A program made the translations under genes and the position numbers. From NCBI RefSeq assembly GCF_001194135.2, contig NC_069008.1:1688808-1752807 (forward strand): a stretch of DNA of 64,000 nucleotides, written 5' to 3'. A model generated the notes under the pieces. The model was not told where the DNA came from, did not search any database, and saw only the letters and a program-made list of their open reading frames with translations. Of this stretch, positions 16,101 through 60,632 are shown in pieces (positions within the stretch are counted from its first letter, which is position 1; every line of letters starts with the position of its first letter). Source of the stretch: Octopus bimaculoides. Taxonomy: Eukaryota.

Positions 16101-17573
16101 CCTGAGGTGGTGAGCTGGCAGAGTCGTGAGCACGTGGCACAAAATGCTTTGTAGCATATCATGTTTTTACATTCTGAGTTCAAATTCCTCTCAGGTTGAC
16201 TTTGCTTTGCATCCAAATGGGGTTGATGTAATCGACTATCCCTTTTCCACAAATTCCAGGCTTAGTGCCTTTAATAAAAAGGATTATTATTATTGTTATT
16301 TTTGTGCTAACTGACAAAAGTTATTGAAGTGACTCAAGGACCAAGAGTTTGGTGCACGGAACTTATGAAACTTGATAAGGGCCATAGGAGACGAAACTTT
16401 TGACCCTAGGGTTCTTTTGTAGCATTTGCTGATTAATTATTACAACTGCTTCAAATTTTGACACAAGGCCAGCAACTTTAGTGGGGGGAGGGAACAGATG
16501 GTTACATGGACCCAGTACATGATTGGTACTTTATTTCAAGGAACCTTGAAAGCATAAAAGACAAAGCTGACCTTGACAGGATTTGAACTCAGAATGTAAA
16601 CAGCTGGAAGAAATGCTGCAAAATATTCTGTCCTCTGACATGTTAACAATTCTGCCAGTTTGCAGCCTAAACAAGTGTAATAATGCATATGTGTATGTAC
16701 ATACATATATACATACATGCACCATGCACACACAGACATATACATACACATACATACATGCACCATGCACACAATACATTAAACACATTATAGAATCTAT
16801 ATACAAGTTCTACATACACACCCTCCACAAACCCATACCACAGACTAACACACCCACGGTGGAGTCTTCATGGTTGCTTGTCCTACCAAAAACTGGAAAT
16901 AGCAGCTAAATCTCCTCTGCATCACTCCTCCCACTGTTTCTTTTTAAATGGAAGGACACACTGGATAATGTAGTCCTAGATACATGATGTTTAGGGAAAT
17001 AATACCAGATGAAAAGGACACACCTGGAACGCCTTTGGAATATCAAGCTATACAATATCATAGAACTATACAGAATCTAAACACACACACACACACACAC
17101 ACACACAAGATCACATACTCTTTATATGCACACCAGATTACATATTCTATATATAAACACACTAGCAACAATTATCAGAAGAATAATTGTAGATCAATCA
17201 AACAGGGTGTATATAGATGAAAACCCAAGGTTGAGGAGAGAAAAATCTAAGCACCATTTGACTAAATGAAGAACGTGTCTGTTGCAATATTTCGTTATAT
17301 TCTTATCACCTTGCTGTAATATCAGGTATGTATACTACAAATATATATAGAGAGAGACTGTAATATACATATCACACAATGTAGACATAAATCATTACAT
17401 TCACAAATTATACACCCAAAGGCTGTATATCCTCAGTTTATACAATCAGAACAACAATAAAGAACAGGGTGTATAATATCAAGATGAGTCAAAGGTTTTC
17501 GGATTTTCACTGATCATTTTTGCCAACTTGTAACTTGACTCAACCTGGTGTTATAAAATGCTATTAAAAACAG

Positions 17574-17636
<63 letters not shown>

Positions 17637-17757
17637 ATTATATGTATTTATTTTATCCTAATTAATAATAATTCGGATAGAATAAATGGGTTAATAGAAA
17701 CCAGGGTAGCAAAGATCACAAAATAACTGGAATGGAATGAACGCATGTTATAACTGC

Positions 17758-17790
<33 letters not shown>

Positions 17791-18008
17791 TATAAAGAGA
17801 GAGAGAGATAGTATATACACATGACTATATAATAACTCTCATGAGATTATATCATATACACAGCAGCCTATGCTTCAGATGAATTATATACACCAATACG
17901 AAACTGGGTATGTGTGCATATACACACACACACACACACACACACATGTATATACACATAAATACACATGTAGATACACATGCGCACACACATACAACAA
18001 TAATACAT

Positions 18009-18039
<31 letters not shown>

Positions 18040-18851
18040 TCCAGAACAACAAAAATAGGCTTATAAACCATGTTGACCCCACCAACCTTGCTATGAATAG
18101 CATCAAGTGTCTATAATACATACACATCACACAGCCTAAAGCACCTATGTGGTTGTTTGACTTGTAAGAGTTAGCAGTCAAATTGCCCTCAAATCACACA
18201 CCTCAGTCTTTTGTATGTATGCAACAAGTATGAGCCAACAAGGACGAACCACTGTATGGTGGCTAGACCTACAAGAAATAGCAGCTGAATTCTTTGTGAC
18301 TGTTACAACAAAACTGACTTAAATAAATAAAAGGAGAGCTTACATAACGTCAACCTAGATACTCCACTGCCCCACTAAAAGATAGATGGTGATTGCCATG
18401 GTTGGAATCCTTTTTGAGAATAGGCTCTACTCAAATCAGGGCTGACCAGAAGTTAAATGAGAACAATAAACAAGTTGTGTATGTGTATATTATGTCTCTG
18501 TGTGTTTGTGTGCATACACATGCAAACATACATCCATACATATATAGAACACACACACACACATCTCTTTATCTTTCGGACTATACACACATGTATGCAG
18601 ACACACAATTATTTCATGTATGCGTGTGTATATATATATATATATAGTTGTATGTGTGTACATTTTTATATATTTATACACATAAATCCATATATATATC
18701 TCAATGTCTCTATACTTATACAAGGACACATACACATGCATACATATCCATATATATACATGTACCTGCACACAGATACACACACACACAAACTGATGCA
18801 TATACAAACATACATACATATGTGCAGGTGTGTGCATATATGTATGTAAGC

Positions 18852-18890
<39 letters not shown>

Positions 18891-18974
18891 CACACATTTG
18901 TGTATACCTATATACACACATATATACATACATATCTCAATACCTCTATACTTATATACACATTGCATATACTA

Positions 18975-19014
<40 letters not shown>

Positions 19015-19061
19015 GTGCTTGTGGTGTTCGGAGGTGTGAGGTCAAAAACAGAAGCCCTTAC

Positions 19062-19177
19062 TTGGCTGACGTGAGAATATGTCTATTGTGGCACTTCTTT
19101 AAATTGTCATCACCTGGTTGTGGCATTAAGTAGTAATCAAGCGTGGTCGTCCGAGTGTGCTCCGGGATCGTTCCCAT
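19062..19177 (-). CDS. Candidate first coding exon of an unidentified gene (MGTIPEHTRTTTLDYYLMPQPGDDNLKKCHNRHILTSA + phase-2 donor)
   Basis: Non-repetitive sequence. ATG in gcaATGG context with an in-frame TGA two codons upstream, 38 codons of ordinary composition, then CAA|GTAAGG donor. No homology recognised. Confidence 0.4.
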
Positions 19178-19429
19178 TGCTCAACCTCCACACAAGCAAC
19201 AACGACAACAACAACAATAACAATTATAGCAACGATTGCAGCGAGCACCGGAGGGGGTTTTCAAAAAAAACACACAACCAGTTTGCACAAACTGTTCCAA
19301 TACAAGAACTCTTCAAACTTTGCACTCCCCCACACACACGCACACACACACACACACCTATGGCATCACTCACGCTCTATCTTTATCACACGCACGCGCA
19401 CACATACATAATCTCTCTATCTCTGATGC

Positions 19430-19647
19430 GAGGAGAGATAAGTGGGAGGGAGGGAGAGGGCAAAGATGCGGTTCTGAGAGAGGTGTGTTGGTAAAGAGTG
19501 ATAACGTTTTTGCAGAGAGAGAGAGAGAGAGANNNNNNNNNNNNNNNNNNNNNNNNNNNNNNNNNNNNNNNNNNNNNNNNNNNNNNNNNNNNNNNNNNNN
19601 NNNNNNNNNNNNNNNNNNNNNNNNNNNNNNNNNNNNNAGAGGGAGGG

Positions 19648-19678
<31 letters not shown>

Positions 19679-20036
19679 GAGAGGGAGAGAGAGAGAGAGG
19701 GAGAGAGGGAGGTGTTTAGAGTGAAAGGGAGAAAGTGAGTGAGAGAGCATAAGTAATATGCAGAGACAGAGATAGAAAGAGATAGATAGATAGAGAGAGA
19801 GATAGCATAATAAATGAGGTGCAAAACGTCAGGGGAGAGAGAGAGAGGGGTTTAGAGAGAAAGGGAGAAAGTGAGTAAGAGAGAGAGAGGGAGTGAGTGA
19901 GAGAGAAAGTGAGTGAGAGTGAGAGAGAGAGAGTGAGTGAGTGAGAGAGAGAAAGTGAGTGAGAGAGAGAGAAAGTGAGTGAGAGAGAGAAAGTGAGTGA
20001 GAGAGAGAAAGTGAGTGAGAGAGAGAAAGTGAGTGA
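19430..20036. repeat. (GA)n microsatellite and GAGAGAGAAAGTGAGT-type minisatellite
   Basis: Direct reading; interrupted by N gaps. Confidence 0.9.
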
Positions 20037-20499
20037 NNNNNNNNNNNNNNNNNNNNNNNNNNNNNNNNNNNNNNNNNNNNNNNNNNNNNNNNNNNNNNNN
20101 NNNNNNNNNNNNNNNNNNNNNNNNNNNNNNNNNNNNNNNNNNNNNNNNNNNNNNNNNNNNNNNNNNNNNNNNNNNNNNNNNNNNNNNNNNNNNNNNNNNN
20201 NNNNNNNNNNNNNNNNNNNNNNNNNNNNNNNNNNNNNNNGAGAAAGTAGGCAGCAGAGCTGAAGCTAAACTTCTACCCCCCCCTCCGGATTCTCCCTCCC
20301 TCTCTCTCTCTCTCTCTCCCAACCATCAAGTGTAAAAGATACCCAGTTCGTCCAACCATACCCCTGTTGCTGCTGGTACCCACAAACAAACTACGCACAT
20401 TCAGCCTGCTTGCTGCTCTTCCTAGCAGCCCCTTTTAGGTCTGAAGCAGAGCACAGCTACCTTTGTACAACTGGGGTAACATATATATCTACAGAATCT

Positions 20500-20584
20500 A
20501 CGACTACAAAATGGGAGAGCTCTATGTGGCCACTTAATGTGGTAAAAATAGCAACCAAATTACCCTAAATCATATTTTACTGTC

Positions 20585-20616
<32 letters not shown>

Positions 20617-21030
20617 GTATGTGTATATGTCTGCTTGTGCTAAACAACGGAGGCTTCTATATGCTAGCTAAGCCTGTTAGAAATATCACCCAAATCTCCC
20701 TCAAATAACACCCATCTTGTGTGAGTGTCTGTGTGTATGTATGAGCTAACAGGAAGACTTCTATATGGTAGCTAAGCCTGTTAGAAATAGCAGCCGAATC
20801 TCCCTCAAACCACACCCATCTTGTGTGTGTGCATGCATGAGCTAACAAGAAAGACTTCTTTCTATATGGTAGTTAAGCCTGTTAGAAATAGCAGTTAGAT
20901 CTCCCTCAAATCACACCCATTGTGTGTGCATGCGCATGCATGAGCTAACAAGGAAGCCTTCTATATGGTAGCTAAACCTGTTAGAAACAGCAGGCAAATC
21001 TCCCTTAAATCACACACTTCTGTCTTAAAA
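20500..21030 (+). repeat. Tandem array (5-6 units, ~100 bp) of the 5' module of the TAGAAATAGCAGCCAAATCTCCCTCAAATCACAC element
   Basis: Repeated ttctatatggtagctaagcctgttagaaatagcagcc.aatctccctcaaa.cacaccc units. Confidence 0.85.
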
Positions 21031-21329
21031 CAATGAGAATGCTTCTAAGAGTGTGTAGTCGTAAGAGATGAAACACTTTTGGCCACAGGTTTGTCCTGAA
21101 GAACTAAGTAACTACAACATCAGAGAGAATAAAAGATTGATGTGATTCTGGTGAGAGACAAAAAGGTGAAGGAATTTGGAATTTGAAGAGACCAAGAGGT
21201 GCAGGCATGGGTTATGTGGTTCAGATGCTTATTTCCAAATGCTGTGATCTTGGGTTCAACTAAAGCCCTGGGTCAACCAAAGCCTTGTGAGTGGATTTGG
21301 TAGACAGAAACTGAAAGAAGCCCATCATA

Positions 21330-21376
<47 letters not shown>

Positions 21377-21378
<2 letters not shown>

Positions 21379-21720
21379 CTTTTACTTGTTTCCGTCATTA
21401 GACTGCAGCCAAGTTGGGGTACTGCATTAAAGAATTTTACTCTCCCAGTAACCCCCCCACTTTTTTTTACAGCCTTGTACTTATTCTATTGGTCTCTTTT
21501 GCTGAACCACTAAGTTATGGGGACATAAATACACCAACACCAGTTGTCAAACTGGTAGTGGGGGAACACACACACAAATATATGCACACATACAATGGGC
21601 ATCTTTCAGTTTCTACCAAATCCATTCGCAAGGTTCTGGTTGGCCAGAGACCATTGCCATGCAGCGGGACTGAACCTGAAACCATGTGGTTTGGAAGTAA
21701 GCTTACAACCATGCTTGTGC
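21377..21720 (-). mobile_element. SINE family A
   Basis: Reverse complement of the family A tail, body and head. Confidence 0.8.
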
Positions 21721-21957
21721 CTATAATCATAGGTGCAAGAGTGTATATGTACATATATATATATATATATATATATANNNNNNNNNNNNNNNNNNNNNNN
21801 NNNNNNNNNNNNNNNNNNNNNNNNNNNNNNNNNNNNNNNNNNNNNNNNNNNNNNNNNNNNNNNNNNNNNNNNNNNNNNNNNNNNNNNNNNNNNNNNNNNN
21901 NNNNNNNNNNNNNNNNNNNNNNNNNNNNNNNNNNNNNNNNNNNNNNNNNNNNNNNNN

Positions 21958-22240
21958 GTTGTTGCCAGTAACGCTGGACTGGCTGCTGTGCAGGTGGCAC
22001 GTAAAAAAACACCTTTTTGAGCGTGGCCGTTGCCAGTACCGCCTGACTGGCCCTCGTGCGGGTGACACATAAAAGCACCCACTACACTCTCAGAGTGGTT
22101 AGTGTTAGGAAGGGCATCCAGCTGTAGAAACTCTGCCAAATCAGATTGGCGCCTGGTGTAGCCATCTGGTTTCACCAGTCCTCAGTCAAATCGTCCAACC
22201 CATGCTAGCATGGAAAGCGGACGTTAAACGATGATGATGA
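21958..22240 (+). mobile_element. SINE family B
   Basis: Well-preserved body ending gcggacgttaaacgatgatgatg. Confidence 0.85.
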
Positions 22241-22244
22241 ATGT

Positions 22245-23172: not shown

Positions 23173-23210
<38 letters not shown>

Positions 23211-24416: not shown

Positions 24417-24470
<54 letters not shown>

Positions 24471-26690: not shown

Positions 26691-28984
26691 GAAAAAAGGC
26701 AGTAGTGATGATGATGATGGTGGTGGTGGTGGTGGTGGTGCTGGTAACGATTATGTTGACGGCTATGCTATGTCTGTTGTTGTTTCGCCTCCACGTCAGT
26801 CCCTGAGCGAGAAGACCTTCTGAGATCAAAGGTTGAATAAAAACTTGAGGAACAATTCTAGGGAGTTTGGTTACTATTTCTAGCAGGTTGAGCCAGCTAC
26901 CGCATAGAGACTTCTTCATTGGATGACAACGATGATGATGATGGTGGTGGTGGTAAGGATCACGATTTTGATTACATGATTACAACGGTTATGATTATGA
27001 TGATGATGATGATGATGATGAAGGTAATAATAATAATAATGGAAAAACAACACAAAAATTCTCATTTTGTAGGATTTTGGCAAAGATGGAATGTGAAGAA
27101 TGGGATGAGGGGGGGGGTAGTTGAGGGGNNNNNNNNNNNNNNNNNNNNNNNNNNNNNNNNNNNNNNNNNNNNNNNNNNNNNNNNNNNNNNNNNNNNNNNN
27201 NNNNNNNNNNNNNNNNNNNNNNNNNNNNNNNNNNNNNNNNNNNNNNNNNNNNNNNNNNNNNNNNNNNNNNNNNNNNNNNNNNNNNNNNNNNNNNNNNNNN
27301 NNNNNNNNNNNNNNNNNNNNNNNNNNNNNNNNNNNNNNNNNNNNNNNNNNNNNNNNNNNNNNNNNNNNNNNNNNNNNNNNNNNNNNNNNNNNNNNNNNNN
27401 NNNNNNNNNNNNNNNNNNNNNNNNNNNNNNNNNNNNNNNNNNNNNNNNNNNNNNNNNNNNNNNNNNNNNNNNNNNNNNNNNNNNNNNNNNNNNNNNNNNN
27501 NNNNNNNNNNNNNNNNNNNNNNNNNNNNNNNNNNNNNNNNNNNNNNNNNNNNNNNNNNNNNNNNNNNNNNNNNNNNNNNNNNNNNNNNNNNNNNNNNNNN
27601 NNNNNNNNNNNNNNNNNNNNNNNNNNNNNNNNNNNNNNNNNNNNNNNNNNNNNNNNNNNNNNNNNNNNNNNNNNNNNNNNNNNNNNNNNNNNNNNNNNNN
27701 NNNNNNNNNNNNNNNNNNNNNNNNNNNNNNNNNNNNNNNNNNNNNNNNNNNNNNNNNNNNNNNNNNNNNNNNNNNNNNNNNNNNNNNNNNAGGGAGGGAG
27801 GAGAAAAAAGCAGGCAGAAAGAAAGGGCGTTGGTTGTTTAATGACATGGTATATAGGAAACATGAGGGAGGGGGAGGTAAAGAGGGAATAGGAGGAGGTA
27901 CTGGTGGAAGAAGAGAGGGAGGTCGTGGAGCGTATGGGAGGTTTGCGAGAGGGAGGGGGAGTAAATGAATCACTGCTTGTTGAAGTTGGTGGTGGTAATA
28001 GTAGGAGTGGTGGTGGTGGGTGAGAGTAGTGGTGTCAGTGGTGAAACGATGGGGAGGAGGGGGGTGACGACTACGATAGACAATGTATCAGTGTGTGTGT
28101 CCGCGTGCGCGCGTATGTGTGTGCGTGAGTAGGATGGTGTGGTAGGAGGTGGAATGCGTGTGTGTATATGTTTAAGTATGTTATGCGTGAATGTGTGTGT
28201 ATATGTTTGCGTATGTTATGCGTGAATGTGTGTGTGTGTGTGTGTGTGTATCAATGACTGGTGGTAATAAAGTGTGTGTGAGTGTGTGTGTGAATAACAA
28301 AGGAGGAAGAGAGAGAGAGGAGGAGGAGGGAGAAAACAAGGAGAAAGGAGCGCGCATGTGTACGCGCGCGAGCGAGGCGGCGGGAAAGTAGCGTGGGTGC
28401 TGGAATGTCTTAGGGCAGCAGCAGTGGTGGTGGTGGTGGTGGTGGTGCGAAGGGTTAGAGAGTTGTTGCTGTATAAACAGAGAAGGAAAAGGAGAAAGAT
28501 GTAAAACAACGAGAGAGAGAGAGGGGGAATTCCTAAGTGGAGAGGGGGGAAGAGCAGAAAGGGAGAGGTGAGAGGTACAGTGGTAGAAAGAGGAAGGGGG
28601 GGTATTAGGAGAAAGACTTGTAATCTAGCTGGGATCAGTGAAAAAGGGATAGATGGAAGAGAGGGTGATGTTGTGTGTGTGAGGGGGAAACGGCTTTAAT
28701 GTTCACACGCCTCCTCCCACAATACCTCCACCTCCGCCCCTTCCTCGACGAGCTCGCTCTAGTTTTGTTTGTTTTTGTTTTATTTCCGTTTCGTGTTATT
28801 TTTTTTTAACCCCTCTTATTCTACAATCTTGTTCCTTAAAAAAATCAGCAGCAGTTAACACCAACAACATCTACCGATGTTATTTATAAGGATTAGCGGG
28901 CCTGAGCCTATCCAGGTGGGAAAACCTGGTAGAAATAGCTGCCAAATCTCCCTCAAATAACACCCTTCTGATTTAATGTATACT

Positions 28985-29325
28985 CTTACTTGTTTCAGTC
29001 ATTTGACTGCGGCCATGCTGGAGCACCGCCTTTAGTCGAGTAAATCGACCCCAGGACTTATTCTTTGTAAGCCTGGTACTTATTCTATTGGTGTCTTTTG
29101 CCGAACCGCTAAGCTACAGCGACGTAAACACACCACCATCGGTTGTCAAGCGATGTTGGGGGGTCAAACACACACATATATATATACATATATACGACGG
29201 GCTTCTTTCAGTTTCCATCTACCAAATCCACTCACAAGGCTTTGGTTGGCCTGAGGCTATTAGAAGAAGACATTTGCCCAAGAAGTGGTTGGAAAGCAAG
29301 TTTCTTATCACAGTCATGCCAGCGC
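28985..29325 (-). mobile_element. SINE family A
   Basis: Well-preserved reverse-complement copy. Confidence 0.85.
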
Positions 29326-30847: not shown

Positions 30848-30951
30848 TATCTATCTCTATCCATCCATCCATCTATCTATCTATCTACTTGTCTATCTAT
30901 CTATCTACTTGTCTATCTATCTATCTACTTGTCTATCTATCTATCTACTTG

Positions 30952-30984
<33 letters not shown>

Positions 30985-31549: not shown

Positions 31550-31767
31550 NNNNNNNNNNNNNNNNNNNNNNNNNNNNNNNNNNNNNNNNNNNNNNNNNNN
31601 NNNNNNNNNNNNNNNNNNNNNNNNNNNNNNNNNNNNNNNNNNNNNNNNNNNNNNNNNNNNNNNNNNNNNNNNNNNNNNNNNNNNNNNNNNNNNNNNNNNN
31701 NNNNNNNNNNNNNNNNNNNNNNNNNNNNNNNNNNNNNNNNNNNNNNNNNNNNNNNNNNNNNNNNNNN

Positions 31768-32908: not shown

Positions 32909-33125
32909 CAGGGTTGGCCAAAAGTCACCCAACAATAAATTAAAATACCATAAATACTATCTGTAATTCTCTTTTGACCCCAATGGAAAAATGGTGTCGC
33001 TCAAGAAGGAGTTCAGTTTGAAGTTTTCATGATGTTTTTATTAAATTCATTCAGTTGTTAAACATAAATAAATCTTGGAGTTAAATGGGTTTGATTTACT
33101 GTCAGGTGACTTTTGGCCAGCCCTG
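32909..33125. mobile_element. Tc1/mariner-type MITE (217 bp)
   Basis: 21-bp TIRs CAGGGTTGGCCAAAAGTCACC / GGTGACTTTTGGCCAGCCCTG with one mismatch, flanked by TA on both sides. Confidence 0.9.
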
Positions 33126-33807
33126 TATGGCAGCTTGACTTGCTAGAAATAGCAGCCAAGCCTTCTCAAATCACAACCAGTTGTCTCATGTAAGTATAAA
33201 CGAATAAGCAAGATTTCTACATGGTAGCTCAAATCACACAGGATAATAATACAGCATTTGAGTTCCGTTCACATAGAAAAAAACTATGGGATGGCCATGG
33301 TTGGAATACCTTTGTTAATAAACCTGCAGGATGAGGACTAAGTTGGTGTTACACAACTACAACAATAATTCATTCAATCAGCCCTGGAAGAGTAAGAGTG
33401 AAAATGAAGTGTGGCAGGATTTGATCCCAGGAAAGCAGGAGCAACATGACCACATGCAGTAAAGCGTTGCCATAATACCCTTCTCCTACACTCTGCACAC
33501 CCGCTCCACCCACAAACAATGACCTAATCTGCTTAATCTGCACTAATCCCCTGCATCCTTTTGTCCCGGATGAAGTTGCAAGCATCAGACGCAGAGTAGT
33601 GGCAAGGAGCAGGAGGAGGGGTGGGGTGGGGAAAAAAATGTTTAAAAAAAAAATACAATTAGTAAAGGGGATGAGTGGTGCAGGAGGGAAGTAGGAAAGG
33701 ATTACGGAGTTAATCTGAGGATGGTTTGGATGGAAGAGGGGGTTGCAGGGAAGAGAGAGGGAGAGAGTGAGAGAGAGAGAGAGAGTGAGAGAGAGAGAAA
33801 GAGAGAG

Positions 33808-36845: not shown

Positions 36846-37609
36846 CATGCATATGTATATATACATATATACATCAAAGAAAGTGTATGTATATATAATA
36901 TGTATAAGCATGCACGAGTGTTTATGTATGTCTAAAAATGTGTATGCATGCATATACATACAAACATGCATGTGTATGCATGCGTATATATGTTGCAAGC
37001 GCATGAGCAGCGTAGGTTCAAACACACACACACACAGAGGAACACCTCCACAGGACATTAAGGGTGTGGTAAAAAAAAAAAAGGTTTACATAACACCACT
37101 AATCTCCACCAAACCCCCCCCACCACCACTCCCAATGTTATCAATATCATCGTAAACATCATCATTATCATCATGATCTCTCCATAAACATCTGCCTCAG
37201 CTACCAGCATCAACAGATAGGTACCACACAGACACACACAGAGGAGCAGGAAAATGAGAACATTGAAGACAGACAGACAGACCAAGGAGAGGTGCCACTC
37301 CGTTAACCAGTAAACGCTATGCAATGCAATGTTGTGTAGCGTGATGCAGTGGCTATCATTCAGGTATGAATGACCGACCAACAACGCATGCACGAACCTG
37401 TGTGAAGAAACAAAGGAGGAGAAGGCAGAGGAAAATAAACGTTATCAGGTAAGCACTTTGTTCAATGGTAGTAGTAGGTCGTGTTTAGCCCCAGGCCAAC
37501 TTAGAGTGAGCAGACCAATGATCAAAACTGTTTCGGCTATGATCATCATCCCACCATTTTCTATATCATCATCTGTAGTGTTCAATATACCCATCTGCCC
37601 ACCCACCTT

Positions 37610-37778
37610 CAGTCAGTAGGGTGTGAAATGAAAGAGATTTGGTTGTTATTTCTTACATGTCCAGCTAACTTCCTTTGACTTGTACATATATACATACATA
37701 AGATAGTAGGCTGTGATTTGTGAGAGTGACTACTATTTCTAGCAGGTCTAGCTACTATATACCAGTCTCTCTTGTTGG

Positions 37779-37820
<42 letters not shown>

Positions 37821-37930
37821 CATACATATATATATACATACATACATATATATATATATACATACATACATACATATATATATACATACATACATACATA
37901 TATATATACATACATACATATATATATACA

Positions 37931-37966
<36 letters not shown>

Positions 37967-51900: not shown

Positions 51901-52714
51901 CTCTATGTAGTCTCTCACCCATATCAACCACCAGTGTTAGATATCAGAGGTATGTCGAACAGAGACCAAGTCACAACGGACATAATACAATTTTGGTCGC
52001 TAGTCCTGTTAGAAATAGCAGCTAGATCGCTCTCAAATCACACCCTACTGTCTGGTGGTGTATGTGAGCGACCTCTTCTACGATAGTCCAGGCTCGACCA
52101 AAGCTTTGTGAGAGTATTCGGTAGACGAAAACTGAAAGGAATCCCGTGGTGTACACACACACATGGAGTATGTGTGTGTGTTTGTTTACCTTCCTATAGT
52201 TTAGCAGATCGGCAAAGTGATCAATGGAAAAATAAACAAAAAACAAATACGGGGGAGTCGGGGAGACCCTTTAATAGTACCCCAGCATGAAAAGGGAAAA
52301 GATGTACGTATGTACGAGTGATCGAATGACAGAGCTCTGGGTGGGAATAACTGAATCTCCTTCAAATCACAATAATTATTTTATGTTCGTGAGCAACATG
52401 ACACCTATATCGGGGAGAAAACAAACAAACAGTTCTTGCTGTTTTTAAAAAAACAGAAGACGTGCTGTATTTATATATATGCAGTCTTTTTCCTGTTAAC
52501 AGTATTTTAAAAGACGAGATGGGTCGCGTCTAGAAAGCGTTTTTATTTTATTTCATTTTTTTCCCTGATATAATTTTATCTTACATACTGCCTAATGTAT
52601 ATCAGATCGGAGTTGACCTGGAGCTAAAAAAATCAACAGGAGCAACAATTAAAGATAAATAGATTTAGAGATGAAATAATGGGTCATTTCTTTTTGTATG
52701 CCATTAGCTCTCTT

Positions 52715-52765
<51 letters not shown>

Positions 52766-53807
52766 ATCTTTTTTATTGGGGCCAACAGAGGGTATATATA
52801 TTTATATATATATATATATATATANNNNNNNNNNNNNNNNNNNNNNNNNNNNNNNNNNNNNNNNNNNNNNNNNNNNNNNNNNNNNNNNNNNNNNNNNNNN
52901 NNNNNNNNNNNNNNNNNNNNNNNNNNNNNNNNNNNNNNNNNNNNNNNNNNNNNNNNNNNNNNNNNNNNNNNNNNNNNNNNNNNNNNNNNNNNNNNNNNNN
53001 NNNNNNNNNNNNNNNNNNNNNNNNNNNNNNNNNNNNNNNNNNNNNNNNNNNNNNNNNNNNNNNNNNNNNNNNNNNNNNNNNNNNNNNNNNNNNNNNNNNN
53101 NNNNNNNNNNNNNNNNNNNNNNNNNNNNNNNNNNNNNNNNNNNNNNNNNNNNNNNNNNNNNNNNNNNNNNNNNNNNNNNNNNNNNNNNNNNNNNNNNNNN
53201 NNNNNNNNNNNNNNNNNNNNNNNNNNNNNNNNNNNNNNNNNNNNNNNNNNNNNNNNNNNNNNNNNNNNNNNNNNNNNNNNNNNNNNNNNNNNNNNNNNNN
53301 NNNNNNNNNNNNNNNNNNNNNNNNNNNNNNNNNNNNNNNNNNNNNNNNNNNNNNNNNNNNNNNNNNNNNNNNNNNNNNNNNNNNNNNNNNNNNNNNNNNN
53401 NNNNNNNNNNNNNNNNNNNNNNNNNNNNNNNNNNNNNNNNNNNNNNNNNNNNNNNNNNNNNNNNNNNNNNNNNNNNNNNNNNNNNNNNNNNNNNNNNNNN
53501 NNNNNNNNNNNNNNNNNNNNNNNNNNNNNNNNNNNNNNNNNNNATACATGTACACACACACACACATATATATAATACATATATTATATATATGCATATA
53601 CATATATATACACAGATATACATACATACACACATATATATACATATTTGACATATATACATACACACATCTTTATATATGTATACACACACACATGTAT
53701 ATATATGTATACACCTACACACACATATATATACATATTTGACATATATACATACACACATCTTTATATATGTATACACACACACATGTATATATATGTA
53801 TACACCT

Positions 53808-53842
<35 letters not shown>

Positions 53843-54733: not shown

Positions 54734-54772
<39 letters not shown>

Positions 54773-54972
54773 NNNNNNNNNNNNNNNNNNNNNNNNNNNN
54801 NNNNNNNNNNNNNNNNNNNNNNNNNNNNNNNNNNNNNNNNNNNNNNNNNNNNNNNNNNNNNNNNNNNNNNNNNNNNNNNNNNNNNNNNNNNNNNNNNNNN
54901 NNNNNNNNNNNNNNNNNNNNNNNNNNNNNNNNNNNNNNNNNNNNNNNNNNNNNNNNNNNNNNNNNNNNNNNN

Positions 54973-55048
<76 letters not shown>

Positions 55049-56199
55049 CATATATACATAAGCTATGTGAATTTCTGGCCATGTGTATGAATGATGGACG
55101 TGATAGTAGTAGATGGGTGATGACGACGATGTCTGAGGTGATGTTTAGATCACCAATGGAACCGCCACAACCCAGTTTATTTAGATAAATCAACACCACA
55201 ACCTCCACCACGTCAAGTCTCCCGTCATACAGTGTTTTGACCACTACTATTACTACTAACAACTCCCCCACTCTTTCCTAGTCAGCCTTTTACTACTATC
55301 ACCGTCTCTACCACCGCCATCGTCTCCACCTGCACCATCATCATCTCTGTAACGTTCTCTTACTTATCCCTTTCCTCTCCCATCAAGCTGCATTCTTCAG
55401 TTATGCTCACAACATACTAACAACCATCACTAGGACAAATAGCTCACACATATACATACATTCCCAATATACACACGCAGCATCATATACGTATGTGTGT
55501 GTGTATTATATATATTTTACACACACGAACCATACTTCCCCCATCACACCCTCTCTTTCCATTCTAAAACACACTATACACATACATACATGCATATATA
55601 CAGCATTAAATTGCTCATGCCACCCCACTGTTCATCTATCACCAGTAAACAAGTGCCACATACCACGCAACACAATTAACCCTACCCATTGGACACACAC
55701 ACACACACACACAGCCCTGACAGCCTCTTCGTGGTCGCTCGACCTGCTAAAAAAAATAGCAACCAAATCTCCCTAAAATACCTTCTTTAACACACACACA
55801 CACGTATTATATTAGGACATTTAAATGGTTCTCCCCGGAATTCCCAACCTATAGAAAAAGGAGGGATGATCACGGCTGGCTGGAATGCTTTTCAGCATAA
55901 GTCTACCCGAACGAGTTAAGAGAGAGCAATCTCAAAGTTAATGAAATAACAGCTAAATCTCTCTCGTATCAACAGAACAGACCACATTAAACAAGTCAGG
56001 GCACACTGGCTGGATTATGTGGTCTTAGAATATATTTTGATTGAAATATATGAGTATAAAAAGATTTAAAGAAAGGTGATAGTGGTCACTGTGGAACGTC
56101 TTTGATAAGTTGGTTCGATCAGGACAGACCCGGGGTTAAACAACATAGCTGTAACCTGACGTCGATCAGATCAGACAGAGGGAGTCACCAGAGGCCCGG

Positions 56200-57030
56200 G
56201 ATGAATGAAAGAAACACTTGAAGACGGCACAGAGAAAGTGGCGGTGAGAGATGACAAGATAAGGAAGTTGTTGTGCAAGAGAGGAAGGGTGTGAGATGAA
56301 GAAGTGGGGTGGTGTAGACAGTAAGGAGAAGTTGTGAGAAAGCGGAGGGTGGGTGGGAAGAGCAGAGAGAGAGTAAAAGCGAAAATAGAAAGTGAGGGGG
56401 TGAGTAAAAAAGGTGCAGAGAGGTAGAGGGAGATAGAGAATGAATCGAAGTAGCACAGAGATAGTAAGAGGTAATGACTGCAACAGAAATACAAGGAGGA
56501 AGAAGCGATGACTAAAACATAGAGAGAAAGAGTGAGTGATGGGAGGAGGAAAGTAAGATGTAAACAGAGAAGTAAAAAGGGAAATAAAGATAAAGTATAA
56601 GAAAACAAAAGGGACGTGAAAAGAGATGGAGGGATAATGAAGGGGAGGCAAAGAGAAAGTGTCAGAAGACAAGGGAAAGATGCGGAGGAGAGAGAGAGAG
56701 ACTGCTTGTGTGTATGTGTATACATGTTGCAAAGAGGCGTAGGCAGAGGTAAGGAAATAGAGACAGGTGTAATGAAGATAAGATGACGATGCGAAGAGAA
56801 GGAAGTAGGATGAGGTATCGTTAAGGCGGGAGGAAAGAGAGAGTGGAAAAAAAAAGGGGGTTGGAAAGAGGGAAAAAGATAAGGAAAGGGAGAGGGGGAG
56901 AAACCCAACAGACAAGAAAGATACTGAGTGAGAAGGGAGTTAAGAGAAGAGGTAAAAAAGAAGATTAACGAATAAAAGAGGGGGGGAAGAGAAGCAGAGA
57001 AGGGGAGGAAAACGTCTGTTGAGCCCAATA
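56200..57030 (+). repeat. Long non-periodic polypurine (GA-rich) low-complexity tract
   Basis: About 800 bp dominated by A and G on the plus strand. Confidence 0.85.
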
Positions 57031-57077
57031 GAGATGGAATGTTGGAATGTATTCTTTTTTTTTGGAGGGAAGCGTAC

Positions 57078-57108
<31 letters not shown>

Positions 57109-57321
57109 AGTCAATGTTTACATGTTAGTGTGTATGTATTGTAATGTTTATGTATGTAACGCAATGTTAATGCGTGAGTATGTTAGGGGCGAGAAAGAAG
57201 TGTGCATGTGTGTGTGTATGCTGCAATGTGTGCGATTGGATGTGTGTGTGTGTGTGCTTTATATGTGATGTATGCGTATGAGACGAGTCTGTGATATAAT
57301 ATGGATGCGCACGCGATATCT

Positions 57322-58022
57322 TTTATCTTTTACTTGTTTCACTCATTAGACTGCAGCCATGCAAGAATTTTTTAGTCGGATTAATCGACCCTAGTATTTA
57401 TTTCCTTTTTTAAGTCTGGTATTTATTCTGTCGGACACCTTATGCCGAACCGCTAAGTTACAGGGACGTAAACACACCAACAACGGTAGTAGGGGATAAA
57501 CAGACACAAAGACACGCACACATACAATATATATATATATACATACATACATATATACGACAGGCTTCTTTCAGTTTCCGTCTACCAAATCAGCTCACAA
57601 TGCTTTGGTCGGCCAGAGGCTATAGTAGAAGACAGACACTTGGCCAAGGTGCCACGCAGTGGGACTGAACCTGGAATCATGTGGTTGGGAAGTAGACTTA
57701 TTTCATTCACTGGACTGCGGCCATTCTGGGGCACTGCCTAGAGAGGTTTTTAGTCGAATGAATTGACCCTCAGTACTTATTCTATCGGTCACTTTTTGTC
57801 AAAAGGCTGAGGTACAGGGATGTAAATTAACCAACACCGGTCCTCAAGTGGTGGGGACAAACATAAACACATAACAGACTTCTTTCAGATTCCGTCTACC
57901 AAATCCACTCACGAGGTTTTGGTTATCCGGAGCTACAGTAGAAGAAACTTGCCCGAGGTGCAATGTAGTGGGAGTGAGTCCAAGTGAATATGGCTGGAAG
58001 CAAGCTTTTTACCCCACAGCCG
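57322..58022 (-). mobile_element. Two tandem SINE family A copies
   Basis: Reverse-complement copies at about 57322-57700 and 57700-58022. Confidence 0.8.
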
Positions 58023-58074
58023 TATAAAACAGTATAATGTATGTGGTTGAATATACCATATAGCTGATCCATTG

Positions 58075-58400
58075 TTGTGAAGGCGCGTGGCTTGGAGGTT
58101 AGGGTATTCGGCTCAGGATCGCAAAGATGTGAGTTTGTCTCCTGGCGGCAAGTTGTATCCTTGAGCAAGATACTTTATTGCATGTTTCTCCAGACCAATC
58201 AGCTGGCAAAAACGAGTCGTACCTGTAATTCAATGAGTCAGCCTTATCACATTCTGTGTTATGCTGAATCGCCCTGAGAACTACATTAAGGGTACATGTG
58301 TCTGTGGAGTGCTCAGCCACTTGCACATTGATTTCACGAGCAGGCTGTTTCGTTCATCTGATAAACGGGAACCCTTATTGTCGTGACCAACGGAGTTGCC
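58075..58400 (+). mobile_element. SINE family C variant, near full length
   Basis: tRNA-like head aggcgcgtggcttggaggttagggtattcggctc, central ttgtatccttgagcaagatacttt, and a tail homologous to 9252-9558. Confidence 0.8.
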
Positions 58401-58627
58401 AGTTAGCTGAACTGTTGTACAATACAAACAACATACATTGTTTATGGTGATATGGATTTGTTGATGTTGTCATGTCAGTCTCACGCCACTTCTGACGATT
58501 ATCTCCATCAATAGTTTCACGTTCGATCTACAAATCAATACGCAGCTCCAGATATACCACATGCGGTCATTCGACCTGCTAGAAATAGCAGCCAAATGCA
58601 CCTGAAATCATACTATTGTCTTGAATA

Positions 58628-58835
58628 CGAGGCGGGTGCTGAAAAGTTCCTAGCTTTATGGGTATTGCAAAAGGCCTGGCTGGAGGCCAACCTTCCAAGT
58701 TCTCAAAATTACCGAAGTAACCACTGCTATAAGTGTATGAATTCGAGAGGGGAATATGTTGAATAACATCATAATTAACTGATCCTCCTGAACTTTCTTT
58801 TACCCCCAAAACAGGCACTTTTCAGCACACCCTTG
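58628..58835 (+). mobile_element. mariner-derived MITE retaining the transposase C-terminus
   Basis: TA-CGAGGCGGGTGCTGAAAAGTTCC ... GGCACTTTTCAGCACACCCTTG termini; internal aagtgtatgaattcgagaggggaatatgttgaataa reads KCMNSRGEYVE*, like the mariner KCxxxxGxYVE end. A second 5' fragment lies at about 59099-59190. Confidence 0.8.
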
Positions 58836-58849
58836 TGTGTGTGTGTGTG

Positions 58850-58990
58850 TGTATCATCATCATTGCCGTTTAATGTTCGCTTTCCGTGCTGGTATGGGTT
58901 GGACGGCTTGACTGAGGACTGGTGAGCCAGAAGGCTGCACCAGGCTAAATCTGATCTAGCAATGGATGCCCTTCCTAACGCCAAACAACA
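58850..58990 (-). mobile_element. SINE family B, 3' part
   Basis: catcatcat..gtttaatgttcgctttcc...ggatgcccttcctaacgccaa. Confidence 0.75.
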
Positions 58991-59317
58991 TAACGTACAC
59001 TGAGTGTACAACCAGATGAGAGAGACACACAGAAGGCCCCTAACTCTTCATCAGTTATCAACCAAATGGTATTACTCAGTTTCGCACCATATACATATTA
59101 TGAGCGGGTGCTGAAAAGCACCTGGCTTTAAGGGTATTGCGGAAGGCGTGGTTGAAGGCTCAACCCTCCAAGTTCTTTTACAGGGCTTATAGGACCTCGG
59201 ATTAAGCAAGGAAAATGAGTACATTACAGAATGGTCATTGCTGAGCTGGGACTAAACAACAAGGCTACACTTTGTCTAAATAAAAGATGGGACTGTTATG
59301 GCTGAAACATGATCCGG

Positions 59318-59702
59318 GTGTGGCTGTGTGGTAAGTAGCTTGCTTCCCAACCACATGGTTCTGGGTTCAGTCCCACTGCATGGCACCTTGGGCAAGTGTC
59401 TTCTACTATAGCCTCGGGCCGACCAAAGCCTTGTGAGTGGATTTGGTAGATGGAAACTGAAAGAAGCCCGTCGTATATATGTATATATATATGTATGTGT
59501 GTCTGTGTTTGTCCCCCCCAACATCGCTTGACAACCGATGCTGGTGTCTTTACGTCCCCGTAACTTAGTGGTTCGGCAAAAGAGATCGATAGAATAAGTA
59601 CTAAGCTTCCAAAGAATAAGTCCTGGGGTCGATTTGCTCGACTAAAGGCGGTGCTCCAGCATGGCCGCAGTCAAATGACAAACAAGTAAAAGAGTAAAAG
59701 AG
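59318..59702 (+). mobile_element. SINE family A, best-preserved full-length copy
   Basis: A-box-like tggctgtgtggt, B-box-like gggttcagtccc, body, (TA)n/(TG)n, and tail aacaagtaaaagagtaaaagag. Confidence 0.9.
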
Positions 59703-59714
59703 ATGTCTGCTAAA

Positions 59715-60632
59715 TAGAGCTGATCCAGGACAAAATAATAAGGATACATAAAATAATGTAGTCCTAGGTACATTGTGTCTAAATATAAGACAGGATGGAC
59801 ATGCCTGGAACATCTGTGAACTATATGTTAGCAAAATTAAGGCTGTGAGGGACAAAACAGTAAGGGTTTGTAAAACAAGATAGTCCTAGATACACTATGT
59901 CTATATAAAAGACAGGATGCAACTTCTGTGAACTGTATGTAAGTGAAATCAGAGCTGTTTGGGCGTAAACAATAATGGTACATAAGAATGTAGTCCTATG
60001 AGTACTCTAGATAACAGACAGGATGGTCATCACTGGAGCAGCTGTGACCTAGCTCCAAGATATACTATAAATAAAAACAGCATGGTCATTTCTGGAATAC
60101 ATTACATCATGTGTCTGCTGGATCATGGCTGACCATTGACAACAAAGACATTAAACAATGTAGTCCTAGATGCACTAAGCCGGAATAAAAGGTTGGTCAC
60201 TTTGAAAATACTTTGGTCTAAAGGACAGCTTTGTAGGACTGACCTGGGGGATAAACAAAAAAGGCACATTAGATAATGTAGTCCTAGATGCACAATGTCA
60301 AAGTTAAGGTCAAGATGGTCACTTCTGGAACAACTTTGATCATAGGTTAGTCAGATCAAGGCTGATCTGGGGGTTAAATAACAAAGGACACATTAGGTAA
60401 TATAGCCCTAGATGCACAATGTCAGAGTTAAAGACAGGATGGTCACTTCTGGAACATCTATGATCATAGATCTGTTGGATCAAACTGACTTCAAGCTAAA
60501 CAACATGGAAAGACAAGTCCAATAATGTAGTCCTAGATGCACAATGTCAGAGTAAAGATAGAATGGTCACTTCTAGAATATCTTTGATGATAAGCCTGCC
60601 AGATCATGGATGACCTGGGACTAAACAACACT
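59715..60632 (+). repeat. Tandem array (7-8 units, ~120 bp) of the 3' module of the TAGAAATAGCAGCC element
   Basis: Repeated cacattagataatgtagtcctagatgcacaatgtc...gatggtcacttctggaac...gac(c/t)tggg..taaacaac units. Confidence 0.9.

What the first reader, a model, noticed from the sequence alone, without database searches (positions are those of the whole stretch)
16870..60632. One ~220-bp dispersed element whose two halves amplify independently into satellites
Seen in sequence: complete copies (e.g. about 47085-47275, 18230-18470, 55730-55920) read TATGAGCCAACAAG..GACC-TAGAAATAGCAGCCAAATCTCCCTCAAATCACACCCTACTGTC (5' module), then GGACACATTGGATAATGTAGTCCTAGATAC..GATGGTCACGGCTGGAA..GCTGACCTGGGG.TAAACAACAAC (3' module with an (AAC)n-like tail). 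The 5' module alone forms arrays at 20500-21030 and 37610-39320, and the 3' module alone at 59715-60632 and 47560-48760. The ~33-bp core also occurs dispersed many times (e.g. near 3750, 4420, 28930, 33140, 52015, 58580, 62270). No tRNA-like head, TIR or TSD is evident. Inference: this is an uncharacterised mobile unit acting as a local satellite seed, through rolling-circle (Helitron/Helentron-like) or slippage/template-jump replication. The recurrent core could be a protein-binding site.
Basis: partly seen in the sequence, partly recalled or inferred. Interest (0 to 1): 0.7.

Follow-up and report, generated by a model that had tools for sequence, protein, structure and literature searches.

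The report
Two-module dispersed repeat that forms arrays
An old, non-coding, roughly 220-bp repeat family in an octopus-like genome has two modules, each of which has been copied head-to-tail into short satellite-like arrays; this is a real feature, but it is a cephalopod example of a pattern already well described in oysters, clams and flies.

Summary
The window holds 17 loci of one repeat family, covering 7.3 kb (12.5% of the read bases). Each locus is built from a ~95-bp module (m5, with a 34-nt core) and a ~125-bp module (m3, ending TTAAACAACAA). Wherever both modules occur, the order is m5 then m3 on one strand, joined by the same junction. One copy with the same layout (m5-m5-m3) sits in an unrelated public assembly.

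Both modules form arrays: up to about 15 m5 units and about 8 m3 units. No array crosses an N gap. The "single-module" arrays are not free-standing. Each is one expanded half of a composite element.

Private variants, neighbour clustering and a dimeric higher-order period indicate that the arrays grew in place, by slippage or unequal exchange.

Nothing supports rolling-circle transposition. There are no Helitron ends, no subterminal inverted repeats and no conserved arms. No tRNA-like head was detected, and only one candidate target-site duplication was found.

The core is more conserved than its flanks (0.84 against 0.68). A constraint on the source copies or 5' truncation explains this as well as protein binding does.

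I could not compare the family with Dfam or Repbase. My verdict is a new member of a known kind, of modest interest.

The parts
3717..4583 (+). Locus 1. Four m5 units (3717-3811, 3800-3894, 4393-4465, 4466-4549) and then the start of an m3 (4553-4583). A later insertion of another SINE at 3906-4394 splits the array.
   Evidence: nhmmer; sequence; the m3 start is significant against shuffles
13160..13417 (.). Locus 2. A remnant of an m5 end plus the 3' part of an m3 on the + strand (13160-13281), lying tail-to-tail with a full m3 on the - strand (13290-13417). The latter abuts the N gap at 13431.
16851..17093 (+). Locus 3. Composite of one m5 and one m3.
18116..18472 (+). Locus 4. Two m5 units and one m3, the same layout as contig L001.
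20495..21096 (+). Locus 5. Five m5 units (array A, period about 101 bp) followed by a degenerate m3 remnant. The units carry private variants (CTAAGCC, CCCATCTTGTG).
   Evidence: TRF; the m3 remnant is only marginal (P 0.07)
26775..26928 (-). Locus 6. Short composite of one m5 joined to the last ~55 nt of m3. It is flanked by the direct repeat TTACCA(C/G)CACCACCA...TCATCATCATC, a candidate target-site duplication in low-complexity DNA.
28915..28976 (+). Locus 7. An m5 core copy whose 5' part is not recognisable, directly followed by another SINE.
33116..33370 (+). Locus 8. Composite of one m5 (plus a weak second) and one m3.
37469..39343 (-). Locus 9. About 15 m5 units (39343 down to 37606) followed by one m3 (37595-37469). 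It has sub-blocks, a (CATA)47 expansion at one unit junction (37781-37968), and a dimeric higher-order period of 192-200 bp. It may be two adjacent elements, with a break at about 38370-38550.
   Evidence: TRF
39899..39990 (+). Locus 10. An isolated m3 fragment (profile positions 25-117).
45168..45256 (+). Locus 11. An m5 with no recognisable m3 downstream.
46412..48788 (+). Locus 12. Mixed run: m5, m5, partial m3, m5, m5, m5, m3, m5, then about 8 m3 units (47435-48788). One m3 unit is split by a tRNA-like SINE insertion at 48067-48306, which has a perfect 18-bp target-site duplication.
51991..52632 (+). Locus 13. Two m5 units separated by an inserted repeat, and a weak remnant of an m3 tail (52596-52632).
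55719..56149 (+). Locus 14. Head-to-tail dimer of the composite (m5-m3-m5-m3). The second m5 is reduced to its core and is joined at the microhomology GTTAA/GTTAGAAA.
58561..60630 (+). Locus 15. One m5 (58561-58628), m3 remnants (59218-59310), another SINE inserted at 59317-59704, then 8 m3 units (59740-60630, period about 124 bp). Adjacent units cluster together.
   Evidence: TRF
61142..61313 (-). Locus 16. Short composite of one m5 and the 3' half of m3, lying next to a 500-bp (ATAC)n tract.
62234..62320 (-). Locus 17. An m5 with no recognisable m3.

Best explanation
This is an old family of short, non-coding, non-autonomous interspersed repeats, in a genome that looks like an octopus genome.

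Structure of the ancestral unit (about 220-240 bp):
- m5: TATGAGCCAACAAGGGAGACCTCTATATGGTAGCTAGACCTGT followed by the core TAGAAATAGCAGCCAAATCTCCCTCAAATCACAC and then CCTACTGTC.
- A short linker: TTAAAATGGAAG.
- m3: GACACATTAGATAATGTAGTCCTAGATAC ... GGATGGTCACGGCTGGAAC ... CTTTGATCATAGGTCTGCTAGATCAGGGCTGACCTGGGGTTAAACAACAA(C)n.

Shown here:
- Copies are scattered among unrelated flanks.
- The module order and the junction are fixed.
- Either module, or the whole unit, can be repeated head to tail.
- Other SINEs inserted into the arrays later.

Inferred, with fair support:
- The arrays grew in place after insertion. A first duplication probably arose by slippage or microhomology-mediated repair at the module borders, for example between TTAAA(A/C) at the linker and the same motif at the tail, or between GTTAAA and GTTAGAAA. 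Unequal exchange then expanded the arrays, in one case in units of a dimer.

Inferred, weakly:
- The unit spread by target-primed reverse transcription, like a SINE or another LINE-dependent retroposon. The reasons are the microsatellite-like (AAC)n tail, the head-body-tail modularity with a short subtype, and one long flanking direct repeat.
- The 34-nt core looks conserved because the source copies had to keep it, and because many first units are 5'-truncated or come from subfamilies with other 5' parts. Selection on each individual copy is not needed to explain it.
For: One composite unit:
- The same m5-to-m3 junction occurs in at least 8 window loci and in contig L001 from NCBI assembly GCA_024449705.1.
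- L001's flanks match nothing in the window.
- In the loci that hold both modules, m5 is followed by m3 on the same strand. An m3 followed by an m5 occurs only inside head-to-tail repeats of the whole unit.

Dispersal:
- The 300-bp flanks of 15 loci share nothing apart from microsatellites and other known repeats.

Growth in place:
- Array A units are each other's nearest neighbours and share 3 private variants, against 0.56 expected.
- Units in the m3 array at 59740-60630 cluster by adjacency: 59747 with 59873, and 60267, 60391 and 60521 together.
- In the long m5 array, unit lengths alternate around 108 and 92 bp. Lag-2 identity (0.735) exceeds lag-1 identity (0.679), and TRF reports a 192-200 bp period.

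Relative age:
- Other SINEs lie inside the arrays. One has a perfect 18-bp target-site duplication, AGACGCATTAGATAATCT, at 48049-48066 and 48307-48324. No case of the reverse nesting was seen.

SINE-like traits:
- The (AAC)n tail reaches (AAC)5 at about 47907-47921. An (AAC)14 tract at 6886-6927 lies next to an m3-tail remnant.
- A short subtype (m5 plus the last ~55 nt of m3) is found at 26775-26928 and at three other loci.
- Locus 6 is flanked by a 15-26 bp direct repeat.

Core:
- Identity to the consensus is 0.84 for the core and 0.68 for the 43 nt upstream in 24 non-array copies (Wilcoxon p = 3e-5).
- In 10 copies found through their m3, the values are 0.83 and 0.70 (p = 0.01). Random background is about 0.6.
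Against: - No small-RNA-derived head was found. ARAGORN finds no tRNA. Rfam gives nothing at the gathering scores and only microsatellite noise at E<=1. These tools also missed the obvious tRNA-like heads of other SINEs in this window, so the negative result is weak.
- Target-site duplications are absent or unrecognisable in 7 of the 8 loci tested. The one candidate lies in trinucleotide-repeat DNA, where my shuffle test is too generous.
- No LINE partner could be examined.
- The signals for growth in place are modest because the arrays are old (65-85% identity between units). The m3 array at 47435-48788 shows no clustering by array at all.
- The family makes up 12.5% of this window. That is high for an ordinary dispersed family and could point to local clustering that my model does not explain.
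Confidence: 0.55

Rival explanations
1. A non-autonomous Helentron (a HINE, like DINE-1 in flies or Cg_HINE in oysters). Rolling-circle transposition spreads a cassette that carries internal tandem repeats and a microsatellite. Read-through or template switching during replication makes the arrays.
For: - The general look is the same as in molluscan HINEs: short satellite-like arrays scattered through the genome, repeats in a fixed orientation, a microsatellite ((TATG)n/(TG)n) beside the repeats, and variable repeat number between copies (PMC7492417, PMC3879986).
- Whole units also occur head to tail (loci 12 and 14).
- The consensus can form a 3' stem-loop.
- A palindrome, ACATTAGATAATGT, sits just after each m3 junction. 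In DTC84 a palindrome lies near each repeat junction.
- Clear target-site duplications are missing in 7 of 8 loci.
Against: - No conserved left or right arm flanks the repeats. The element seems to consist of the two repeat modules only.
- There is no significant inverted similarity between the two ends (score 16 against a null of 15.3).
- The ends are not TC...CTRR.
- The hairpins have no covariation support.
- One locus has a long flanking direct repeat.
- Private variants and the dimeric period are explained by growth in place.
Confidence: 0.15
2. The copies are 5'-truncated 3' ends of a longer autonomous retrotransposon. Its 3' untranslated region would carry an m5 array followed by m3 and an (AAC)n tail. 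The variable number of m5 units would then reflect where reverse transcription stopped.
For: - The 3' end is fixed and the 5' extent varies. The order is always m5 then m3.
- First units begin at varying profile positions (7 to 45).
- In single-unit loci the sequence upstream of the core is close to random (0.68 against 0.60).
- The tail is microsatellite-like.
Against: - In four multi-unit loci the first m5 is complete and the DNA upstream of it is unrelated between loci.
- The window has no reading frame with a reverse-transcriptase look. All ORFs of 110 aa or more are low-complexity.
- Truncation cannot produce arrays of m3, nor head-to-tail composites.
Confidence: 0.15
3. m5 and m3 are two separate small retroposons. 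Each has its own microsatellite tail ((TATG)n and (AAC)n) and inserts preferentially into that microsatellite, so arrays build up by repeated insertion into earlier copies.
For: - Units are separated by microsatellite spacers of variable length.
- Dong/R4-type LINEs are among the recently active families in Octopus vulgaris (PMC13282606). From my own knowledge, not checked here, these LINEs target simple repeats in other animals.
Against: - The m5-to-m3 junction is the same in at least 9 independent copies.
- Locus ends are not enriched for alternating purine-pyrimidine microsatellites: 2 of 15 at the 5' end and 5 of 15 at the 3' end, against a background of 0.20.
- Array units share private variants and a dimer period.
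Confidence: 0.07
4. It is not mobile. It would be either a locally duplicated complex satellite or an artefact of a gapped short-read assembly.
For: - The family has an unusually high density in one window (12.5%), and 13 of 18 blocks are on the + strand.
- The assembly does contain artefacts, such as the 47-bp duplicate around the 10-N gap.
Against: - The flanks are unrelated.
- An independent copy exists in another assembly with different flanks.
- Units are 15-35% diverged, and no array touches a gap.
- The strand bias is not significant (my estimate, not run as a tool call, is a binomial p of about 0.1).
Confidence: 0.05

Closest known systems
Cg_HINE elements of the Pacific oyster and the related pearl/DTC84 tandem-repeat-containing elements of bivalves (PMC7492417, PMC8268682, PMC3879986)
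   Same: - Short non-coding mobile units of molluscs that carry satellite-like repeats.
- The number of repeats varies from copy to copy.
- A microsatellite lies next to the repeats.
- The repeats keep a fixed orientation.
- A palindrome lies near the repeat junction.
- Arrays are scattered through the genome rather than concentrated in heterochromatin.
   Different: - Those elements have unique left and right arms with subterminal inverted repeats and a 3' palindrome, and they carry one kind of central repeat.
- Here no arms or inverted repeats were found.
- Here two unrelated modules make up the whole unit, and either module can expand.
- Here one copy has a long flanking direct repeat.
DINE-1 / DINE-TR1 and Tetris of Drosophila (PMC4067079; the Tetris and DINE-TR1 comparison is from my own knowledge)
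   Same: Abundant non-autonomous elements whose internal repeats have grown into satellite arrays. Tetris supplies two different repeat types.
   Different: Those are Helentron or foldback elements with defined inverted termini. None was found here.
SINEs with a highly conserved central domain (CORE, V, Deu, Ceph, Meta and Nin-DC superfamilies; PMC4824008, PMC5804259, PMC4758252)
   Same: - A short non-coding dispersed unit.
- A block of about 34 nt is far better conserved than the neighbouring sequence.
- A modular head-body-tail build, including a short subtype.
- A tail that is a simple repeat.
   Different: - No polymerase III head was detected.
- The core could not be compared with the named domains. 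The only domain piece printed in a paper I could read, a 23-nt Ceph/RTE piece, does not match.
- Tandem growth of modules is not a usual trait of those SINEs.
SVA and the zebrafish DANA element (from my own knowledge)
   Same: Composite non-autonomous retroposons with an internal region that varies in repeat number and spawns mini- or microsatellites.
   Different: Unrelated sequences and hosts. SVA has a single variable-number repeat region and a poly-A tail. DANA has a tRNA head.

Membership tests
SINE (LINE-dependent short retroposon) | 5' head derived from a tRNA, 5S, 7SL or snRNA, with internal polymerase III promoter boxes | tested here: inconclusive
   ARAGORN finds no tRNA in the window. 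Rfam gives nothing at the gathering scores or at E<=1 over the arrays. By eye there is no good A or B box. However, the same tools missed the evident tRNA-like heads of other SINEs in this window, so their power is low.
SINE (LINE-dependent short retroposon) | 3' tail that is a simple repeat or poly-A and is shared with a partner LINE | tested here: inconclusive
   The tail TTAAACAACAA(C)n is present, and (AAC)n expands in some copies. No LINE sequence of this species was available for comparison.
SINE (LINE-dependent short retroposon) | Target-site duplications of variable length flanking each copy | tested here: inconclusive
   One of 8 loci has a 15-26 bp flanking direct repeat, in low-complexity DNA. 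The others have none above chance. The copies are old.
HINE / non-autonomous Helentron (DINE-1, Cg_HINE) | Subterminal inverted repeats in the left and right modules | tested here: not met
   The best inverted alignment between m5 and m3 scores 16, which is no better than the shuffle mean of 15.3 for the equal-scoring direct alignment. No significant inverted similarity between the ends was found.
HINE / non-autonomous Helentron (DINE-1, Cg_HINE) | Conserved unique left and right flanking modules around the central tandem repeats | tested here: not met
   The 300-bp flanks of 15 loci share only microsatellites and other repeat families.
HINE / non-autonomous Helentron (DINE-1, Cg_HINE) | Short palindrome or stem-loop at the 3' end | tested here: inconclusive
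   The consensus folds into a 3' stem-loop (z = -2.1 for the whole unit). RNAalifold predicts no shared structure across 20 copies.
HINE / non-autonomous Helentron (DINE-1, Cg_HINE) | Insertion at TT without a target-site duplication | not testable with these tools
   This needs empty sites from other genomes or haplotypes. None could be fetched.
Canonical Helitron | 5' TC and 3' CTRR ends, with a hairpin 10-12 nt before the 3' end | tested here: not met
   The consensus ends are TATGAGCC... and ...TTAAACAACAAC on one strand, and GTTGTT... and ...GGCTCATA on the other.
MITE (DNA transposon derivative) | Terminal inverted repeats and a short fixed-length target-site duplication | tested here: not met
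   There are no terminal inverted repeats and no recurrent short duplication at the ends.
SINE superfamily defined by a highly conserved domain | A central block conserved well above the rest of the element | tested here: met
   Core 0.84 against upstream 0.68, p = 3e-5. In copies found through their m3, 0.83 against 0.70, p = 0.01.
SINE superfamily defined by a highly conserved domain | Sequence identity of that block to a named domain (CORE, V, Deu, Ceph, Meta, Nin-DC) | not testable with these tools
   No Repbase, Dfam or SINEBase sequences were at hand. Only a 23-nt Ceph/RTE piece printed in PMC5786205 could be tried, and it does not match (P 0.12).
TE-derived satellite seed (general kind) | Tandem arrays made of a part of a dispersed element, with signs of growth in place | tested here: met
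   TRF arrays, private variants and neighbour clustering, and a dimeric higher-order period.

The most novel reading that the evidence does not exclude
The family is a cephalopod-specific mobile unit of a type not yet classified. It has no arms, no inverted repeats and no polymerase III head. Its 34-nt core is a new highly conserved domain, kept because a host or transposon protein must bind it. Its two modules are the source of larger satellites elsewhere in octopus genomes, possibly including centromeric ones.
Probability: 0.1. Interest if true: 0.6.

Novelty: new member of a known kind. Interest (0 to 1): 0.3.

Why it matters
Octopus genomes are about two-thirds repeats, and most of their SINE families are unclassified: 893 of the 900 recently active SINE families in O. 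vulgaris (PMC13282606). My one full-text search combining 'satellitome' with cephalopod terms listed no paper that used the word.

A family that takes up an eighth of a 64-kb stretch would be worth entering in a curated repeat library, because it can turn either of its halves into arrays. Such arrays confound assembly, repeat masking and tandem-repeat counts. They also offer a tractable case of how satellites are born from dispersed elements outside bivalves and insects.

If the conserved core turns out to be a required binding or priming site, it would help to identify the machinery that moved the family. As things stand, this is a sound description of an ordinary kind of repeat, not a surprise.

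Tried and rejected
1. Fetching more copies through proteins.
   - A 64-aa translation of the consensus found only one protein, P0001. The exhaustive representative search returned only P0001 itself.
   - Exact look-ups of two window ORFs inside the arrays found nothing.
   - P0003 and P0004, which were hits to the other abundant SINE, have no contig on record.
2. Fetching copies by DNA pattern. Two core patterns were scanned in JGI metagenomes and in GTDB genomes, with 0 hits in all four scans. This was expected, because those collections hold no cephalopod genomes.
3. Naming assembly GCA_024449705.1. There was no paper hit and no source name.
4. Literature search for the motif strings. Only an irrelevant hit came back.
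5. Homology between m5 and m3, with the idea that the unit is a diverged dimer. Only a 13-nt match, CAACAAGGGAGAC/CAACAAAGGACAC, was found, which is not significant (813 of 2000 shuffles).
6. Conserved RNA or DNA structure.
   - The m5 hairpin (GGGAGA/TCTCCC and TGGTAGCT/AGCAGCCA) has no covariation beyond shuffles.
   - The m3 3' stem-loop has none either.
7. A shared upstream sequence at loci 9 and 15. It turned out to be a separate small palindromic repeat with a third copy at 9489-9537.
8. Similarity of the unit to the other repeat families in the window. None was found.
9. Homing to microsatellites. There is no enrichment at locus ends.
10. A Pfam scan of upstream regions.

Full report
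**What the window is**

The 64-kb window is 39.8% G+C. It has 16 runs of N and a very large number of microsatellites, and it has no convincing reading frame. A reading frame through another abundant repeat (60653-61018) matches an uncharacterised protein of Octopus bimaculoides at 92% identity over the shared part. The genome is therefore an octopus or a close relative. I did not establish the exact species.

**Gaps first**

Nine N runs lie within 16870-60632. That is the six the program listed plus 31550-31767, 52825-53543 and 54773-54972. None falls inside an array or a composite copy. The array at 20495-21096 lies wholly in the read stretch 20240-21777. The large arrays at 37469-39343, 46412-48788 and 58561-60630 lie in gap-free stretches.

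Most of the 16 gaps abut a simple repeat, as expected for a short-read assembly. The 10-N gap at 4233-4242 is flanked by a 47-bp exact duplicate, so that small piece is an artefact. Nothing below depends on continuity across a gap.

Tandem Repeats Finder reports a 101-bp array at 20725-21015, a 93/192/200-bp array at 38668-39315 and a 124-bp array at 60239-60630.

I built profiles for the two modules and iterated them. This gave 42 m5 and 25 m3 matches at E<1e-3. With longer profiles there are 17 loci covering 7,264 bp, or 12.5% of the read bases.

The 31-nt core occurs 15 times at 3 or fewer mismatches against none expected. An m3 box occurs 12 times against 0.1 expected.

**Anatomy**

- The m5 consensus is TATGAGCCAACAAGGGAGACCTCTATATGGTAGCTAGACCTGT-TAGAAATAGCAGCCAAATCTCCCTCAAATCACAC-CCTACTGTC.
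- In arrays, m5 units are separated by (TATG)n, (TG)n or (TA)n spacers.
- The m3 consensus is GACACATTAGATAATGTAGTCCTAGATAC...AAAGACAGGATGGTCACGGCTGGAACACCTTTGATCATAGGTCTGCTAGATCAGGGCTGACCTGGGGTTAAACAACAA.
- The two modules are joined by TTAAAAnGGAAG. This junction is the same in at least eight window loci.
- The junction recurs in the only outside copy I could fetch, a 502-bp contig of NCBI assembly GCA_024449705.1. That contig reads m5-m5-m3, and its flanks match nothing in the window.
- Where both modules are present, the order is m5 then m3 on one strand. An m3 is followed by an m5 only inside head-to-tail repeats of the whole unit.
- The m3-to-m3 junction (GGGGTTAAACAACAAAGGACACATTAG) resembles the m5-to-m3 junction. 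The "AAC tail" is therefore also the first few bases of the next m3 period.
- A short subtype joins m5 directly to the last ~55 nt of m3, at 26775-26928 and at three other loci.

**The single-module arrays are halves of composites**

- The 15-unit m5 array ends in one m3 (37469-37595).
- The five-unit m5 array at 20495-21030 is followed by only a degenerate m3-like remnant, which is marginal against shuffles (P 0.07).
- The m3 arrays have m5 units upstream.
- The cores near 3750 and 4420 are one four-unit m5 array split by a later SINE insertion, and that array is followed by the start of an m3.
- Whole units also occur head to tail (55719-56149 and 46469-47557).

The general form is therefore (m5)n(m3)m, with n from 1 to about 15 and m from 1 to about 8.

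**How the arrays arose**

- Units of the array at 20650-21015 are each other's nearest neighbours. They share three private variants, against 0.56 expected for random sets of four.
- In the m3 array at 59740-60630, adjacent units cluster together.
- In the long m5 array, unit lengths alternate near 108 and 92 bp. Units two apart are more alike (0.735) than neighbours (0.679), and TRF sees a 192-200 bp period. That is the signature of expansion of a dimer by unequal exchange.
- The second unit of the dimer at 55719-56149 is joined at a short shared string, GTTAA/GTTAGAAA, which suggests microhomology-mediated duplication.
- Ends of loci are not enriched for microsatellites, so repeated insertion into a microsatellite tail does not explain the arrays.
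- The m3 array at 47435-48788 is too diverged to say anything about.

Growth in place is therefore the best reading, with fair but not strong support, because all the arrays are old.

**How the unit spread**

Flanks of different loci are unrelated, so the copies were dispersed and not segmentally duplicated.

I found no terminal or subterminal inverted repeats, no Helitron ends, and no conserved arms outside the two modules. The features that define Helentron-derived elements in oysters (PMC7492417) are therefore not met. The consensus can fold (z = -2.1), but neither the m5 hairpin nor the m3 3' stem-loop is kept by compensating changes.

No tRNA-like head was detected. These tools also miss the plain tRNA-like heads of other SINEs in the window, so this negative result is weak.

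One locus (26775-26928) is flanked by a 15-26 bp direct repeat, but it sits in trinucleotide-repeat DNA. By comparison, a tRNA-like SINE that landed in an m3 unit has a perfect 18-bp duplication (48049-48066 and 48307-48324). This shows that nick-primed reverse transcription operates in this genome. It also shows that the m5/m3 family is older than that SINE's activity.

Taken together, the simple-repeat tail, the modular build with a short subtype, and the single candidate duplication lean towards a SINE-like retroposon. This step is inferred, not shown.

**The core**

In 24 copies outside the two large m5 arrays, the 34-nt core is 0.84 identical to the consensus. The 43 nt upstream are 0.68 identical, barely above the random level of 0.60 (p = 3e-5). 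The same holds in ten copies found through their m3, which removes the bias of finding copies by the core (0.83 against 0.70, p = 0.01).

Three explanations remain open:
- The source copies had to keep the core, as with the conserved domains of SINE superfamilies (PMC4824008, PMC5804259).
- Many first units are 5'-truncated or come from subfamilies with different 5' parts.
- Something binds the core in each copy.

I cannot separate these explanations here.

**Comparison with what is known**

The closest described things are the tandem-repeat-carrying mobile elements of bivalves (Cg_HINE, pearl, DTC84; PMC7492417, PMC3879986) and DINE-1 and Tetris of flies (PMC4067079). More generally, the birth of satellites from parts of transposable elements has been reviewed (PMC12628747).

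The present family works like these, but it fails their structural membership tests. It differs in being made only of two unrelated modules, either of which can expand. I found no open paper on such elements in cephalopods, and I could not query Dfam or Repbase. The family may therefore already sit unnamed in an automated library.

**Verdict**

It is most likely an old SINE-like composite repeat whose modules were multiplied in place. The rolling-circle idea is not supported, and protein binding was not tested. It is a new member of a known kind, and I rate the interest at 0.3.

Noticed in passing
window 4186-4289: The 10-N gap at 4233-4242 is flanked on both sides by the same 47 bases (tctttcattttccgtctaccaaatccactcacaaggctttggtcagc). 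This looks like overlapping contig ends that were scaffolded without being merged, so it is an assembly artefact.
   Followed up: yes
window 48049-48324: A 240-bp tRNA-like SINE (reverse orientation, T-run and G-run at its left end) is inserted in an m3 unit. It has a perfect 18-bp target-site duplication, AGACGCATTAGATAATCT. The insertion shows that the m3 array is older than this SINE, and it splits one unit into two apparent ones.
   Followed up: yes
window 3906-4394, 28985-29290, 59317-59704, 60640-60976 and many more: A very abundant composite SINE of about 480 bp. It has a tRNA-like part, an internal (AC)n(AT)n microsatellite and a part beginning GTCATTTGACTGCGGCCATGCTGGAGCACC. A frame through it matches an Octopus bimaculoides protein. 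Two inverted copies bracket the m3 array at 59740-60630, and the left one interrupts the array.
   Followed up: partly
window 6800-6927: An (AAC)14 tract is preceded by TGATCTGAGGCTAAACAGCAATAAC, which looks like an m3 tail. It abuts the head of a reverse-oriented tRNA-like SINE. This would be an m3 tail whose AAC repeat has expanded.
   Followed up: partly
window 63290-63334: A short interstitial telomere-like tract, (CCCTAA) repeated about 7 times at 75% match (TRF).
   Followed up: no
window 11937-12118: A 91-bp unit with tRNA-like sequence is repeated twice at 100% identity, 42 bp after the N gap at 11643-11894. It is either a very recent duplication or another assembly artefact.
   Followed up: no
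window 39528-39589, 58334-58382, 9489-9537: A small, partly palindromic repeat (CACAAGCAGGGTGTTCCGTTGATCAGATCAACTGGAACCCTTGTCGTCATAAC) with three copies. Two lie about 200 bp upstream of m5 arrays and the third lies nowhere near one. It is probably a separate family.
   Followed up: partly
start of each m3 unit in the window (e.g. 60273-60286); L001 375-388: The palindrome ACATTAGATAATGT lies about 10 nt after each m3 junction. In contig L001 it reads GCATTGGTCAATGC, so both outer and both inner stem positions have changed together and the 6-bp stem is kept. This is a single case, so it is anecdotal.
   Followed up: partly
window 37781-37968: A (CATA)47 tract has expanded at one junction between m5 units. 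It gives sub-threshold Rfam hits to mir-297 and mir-1277, which are low-complexity noise.
   Followed up: yes
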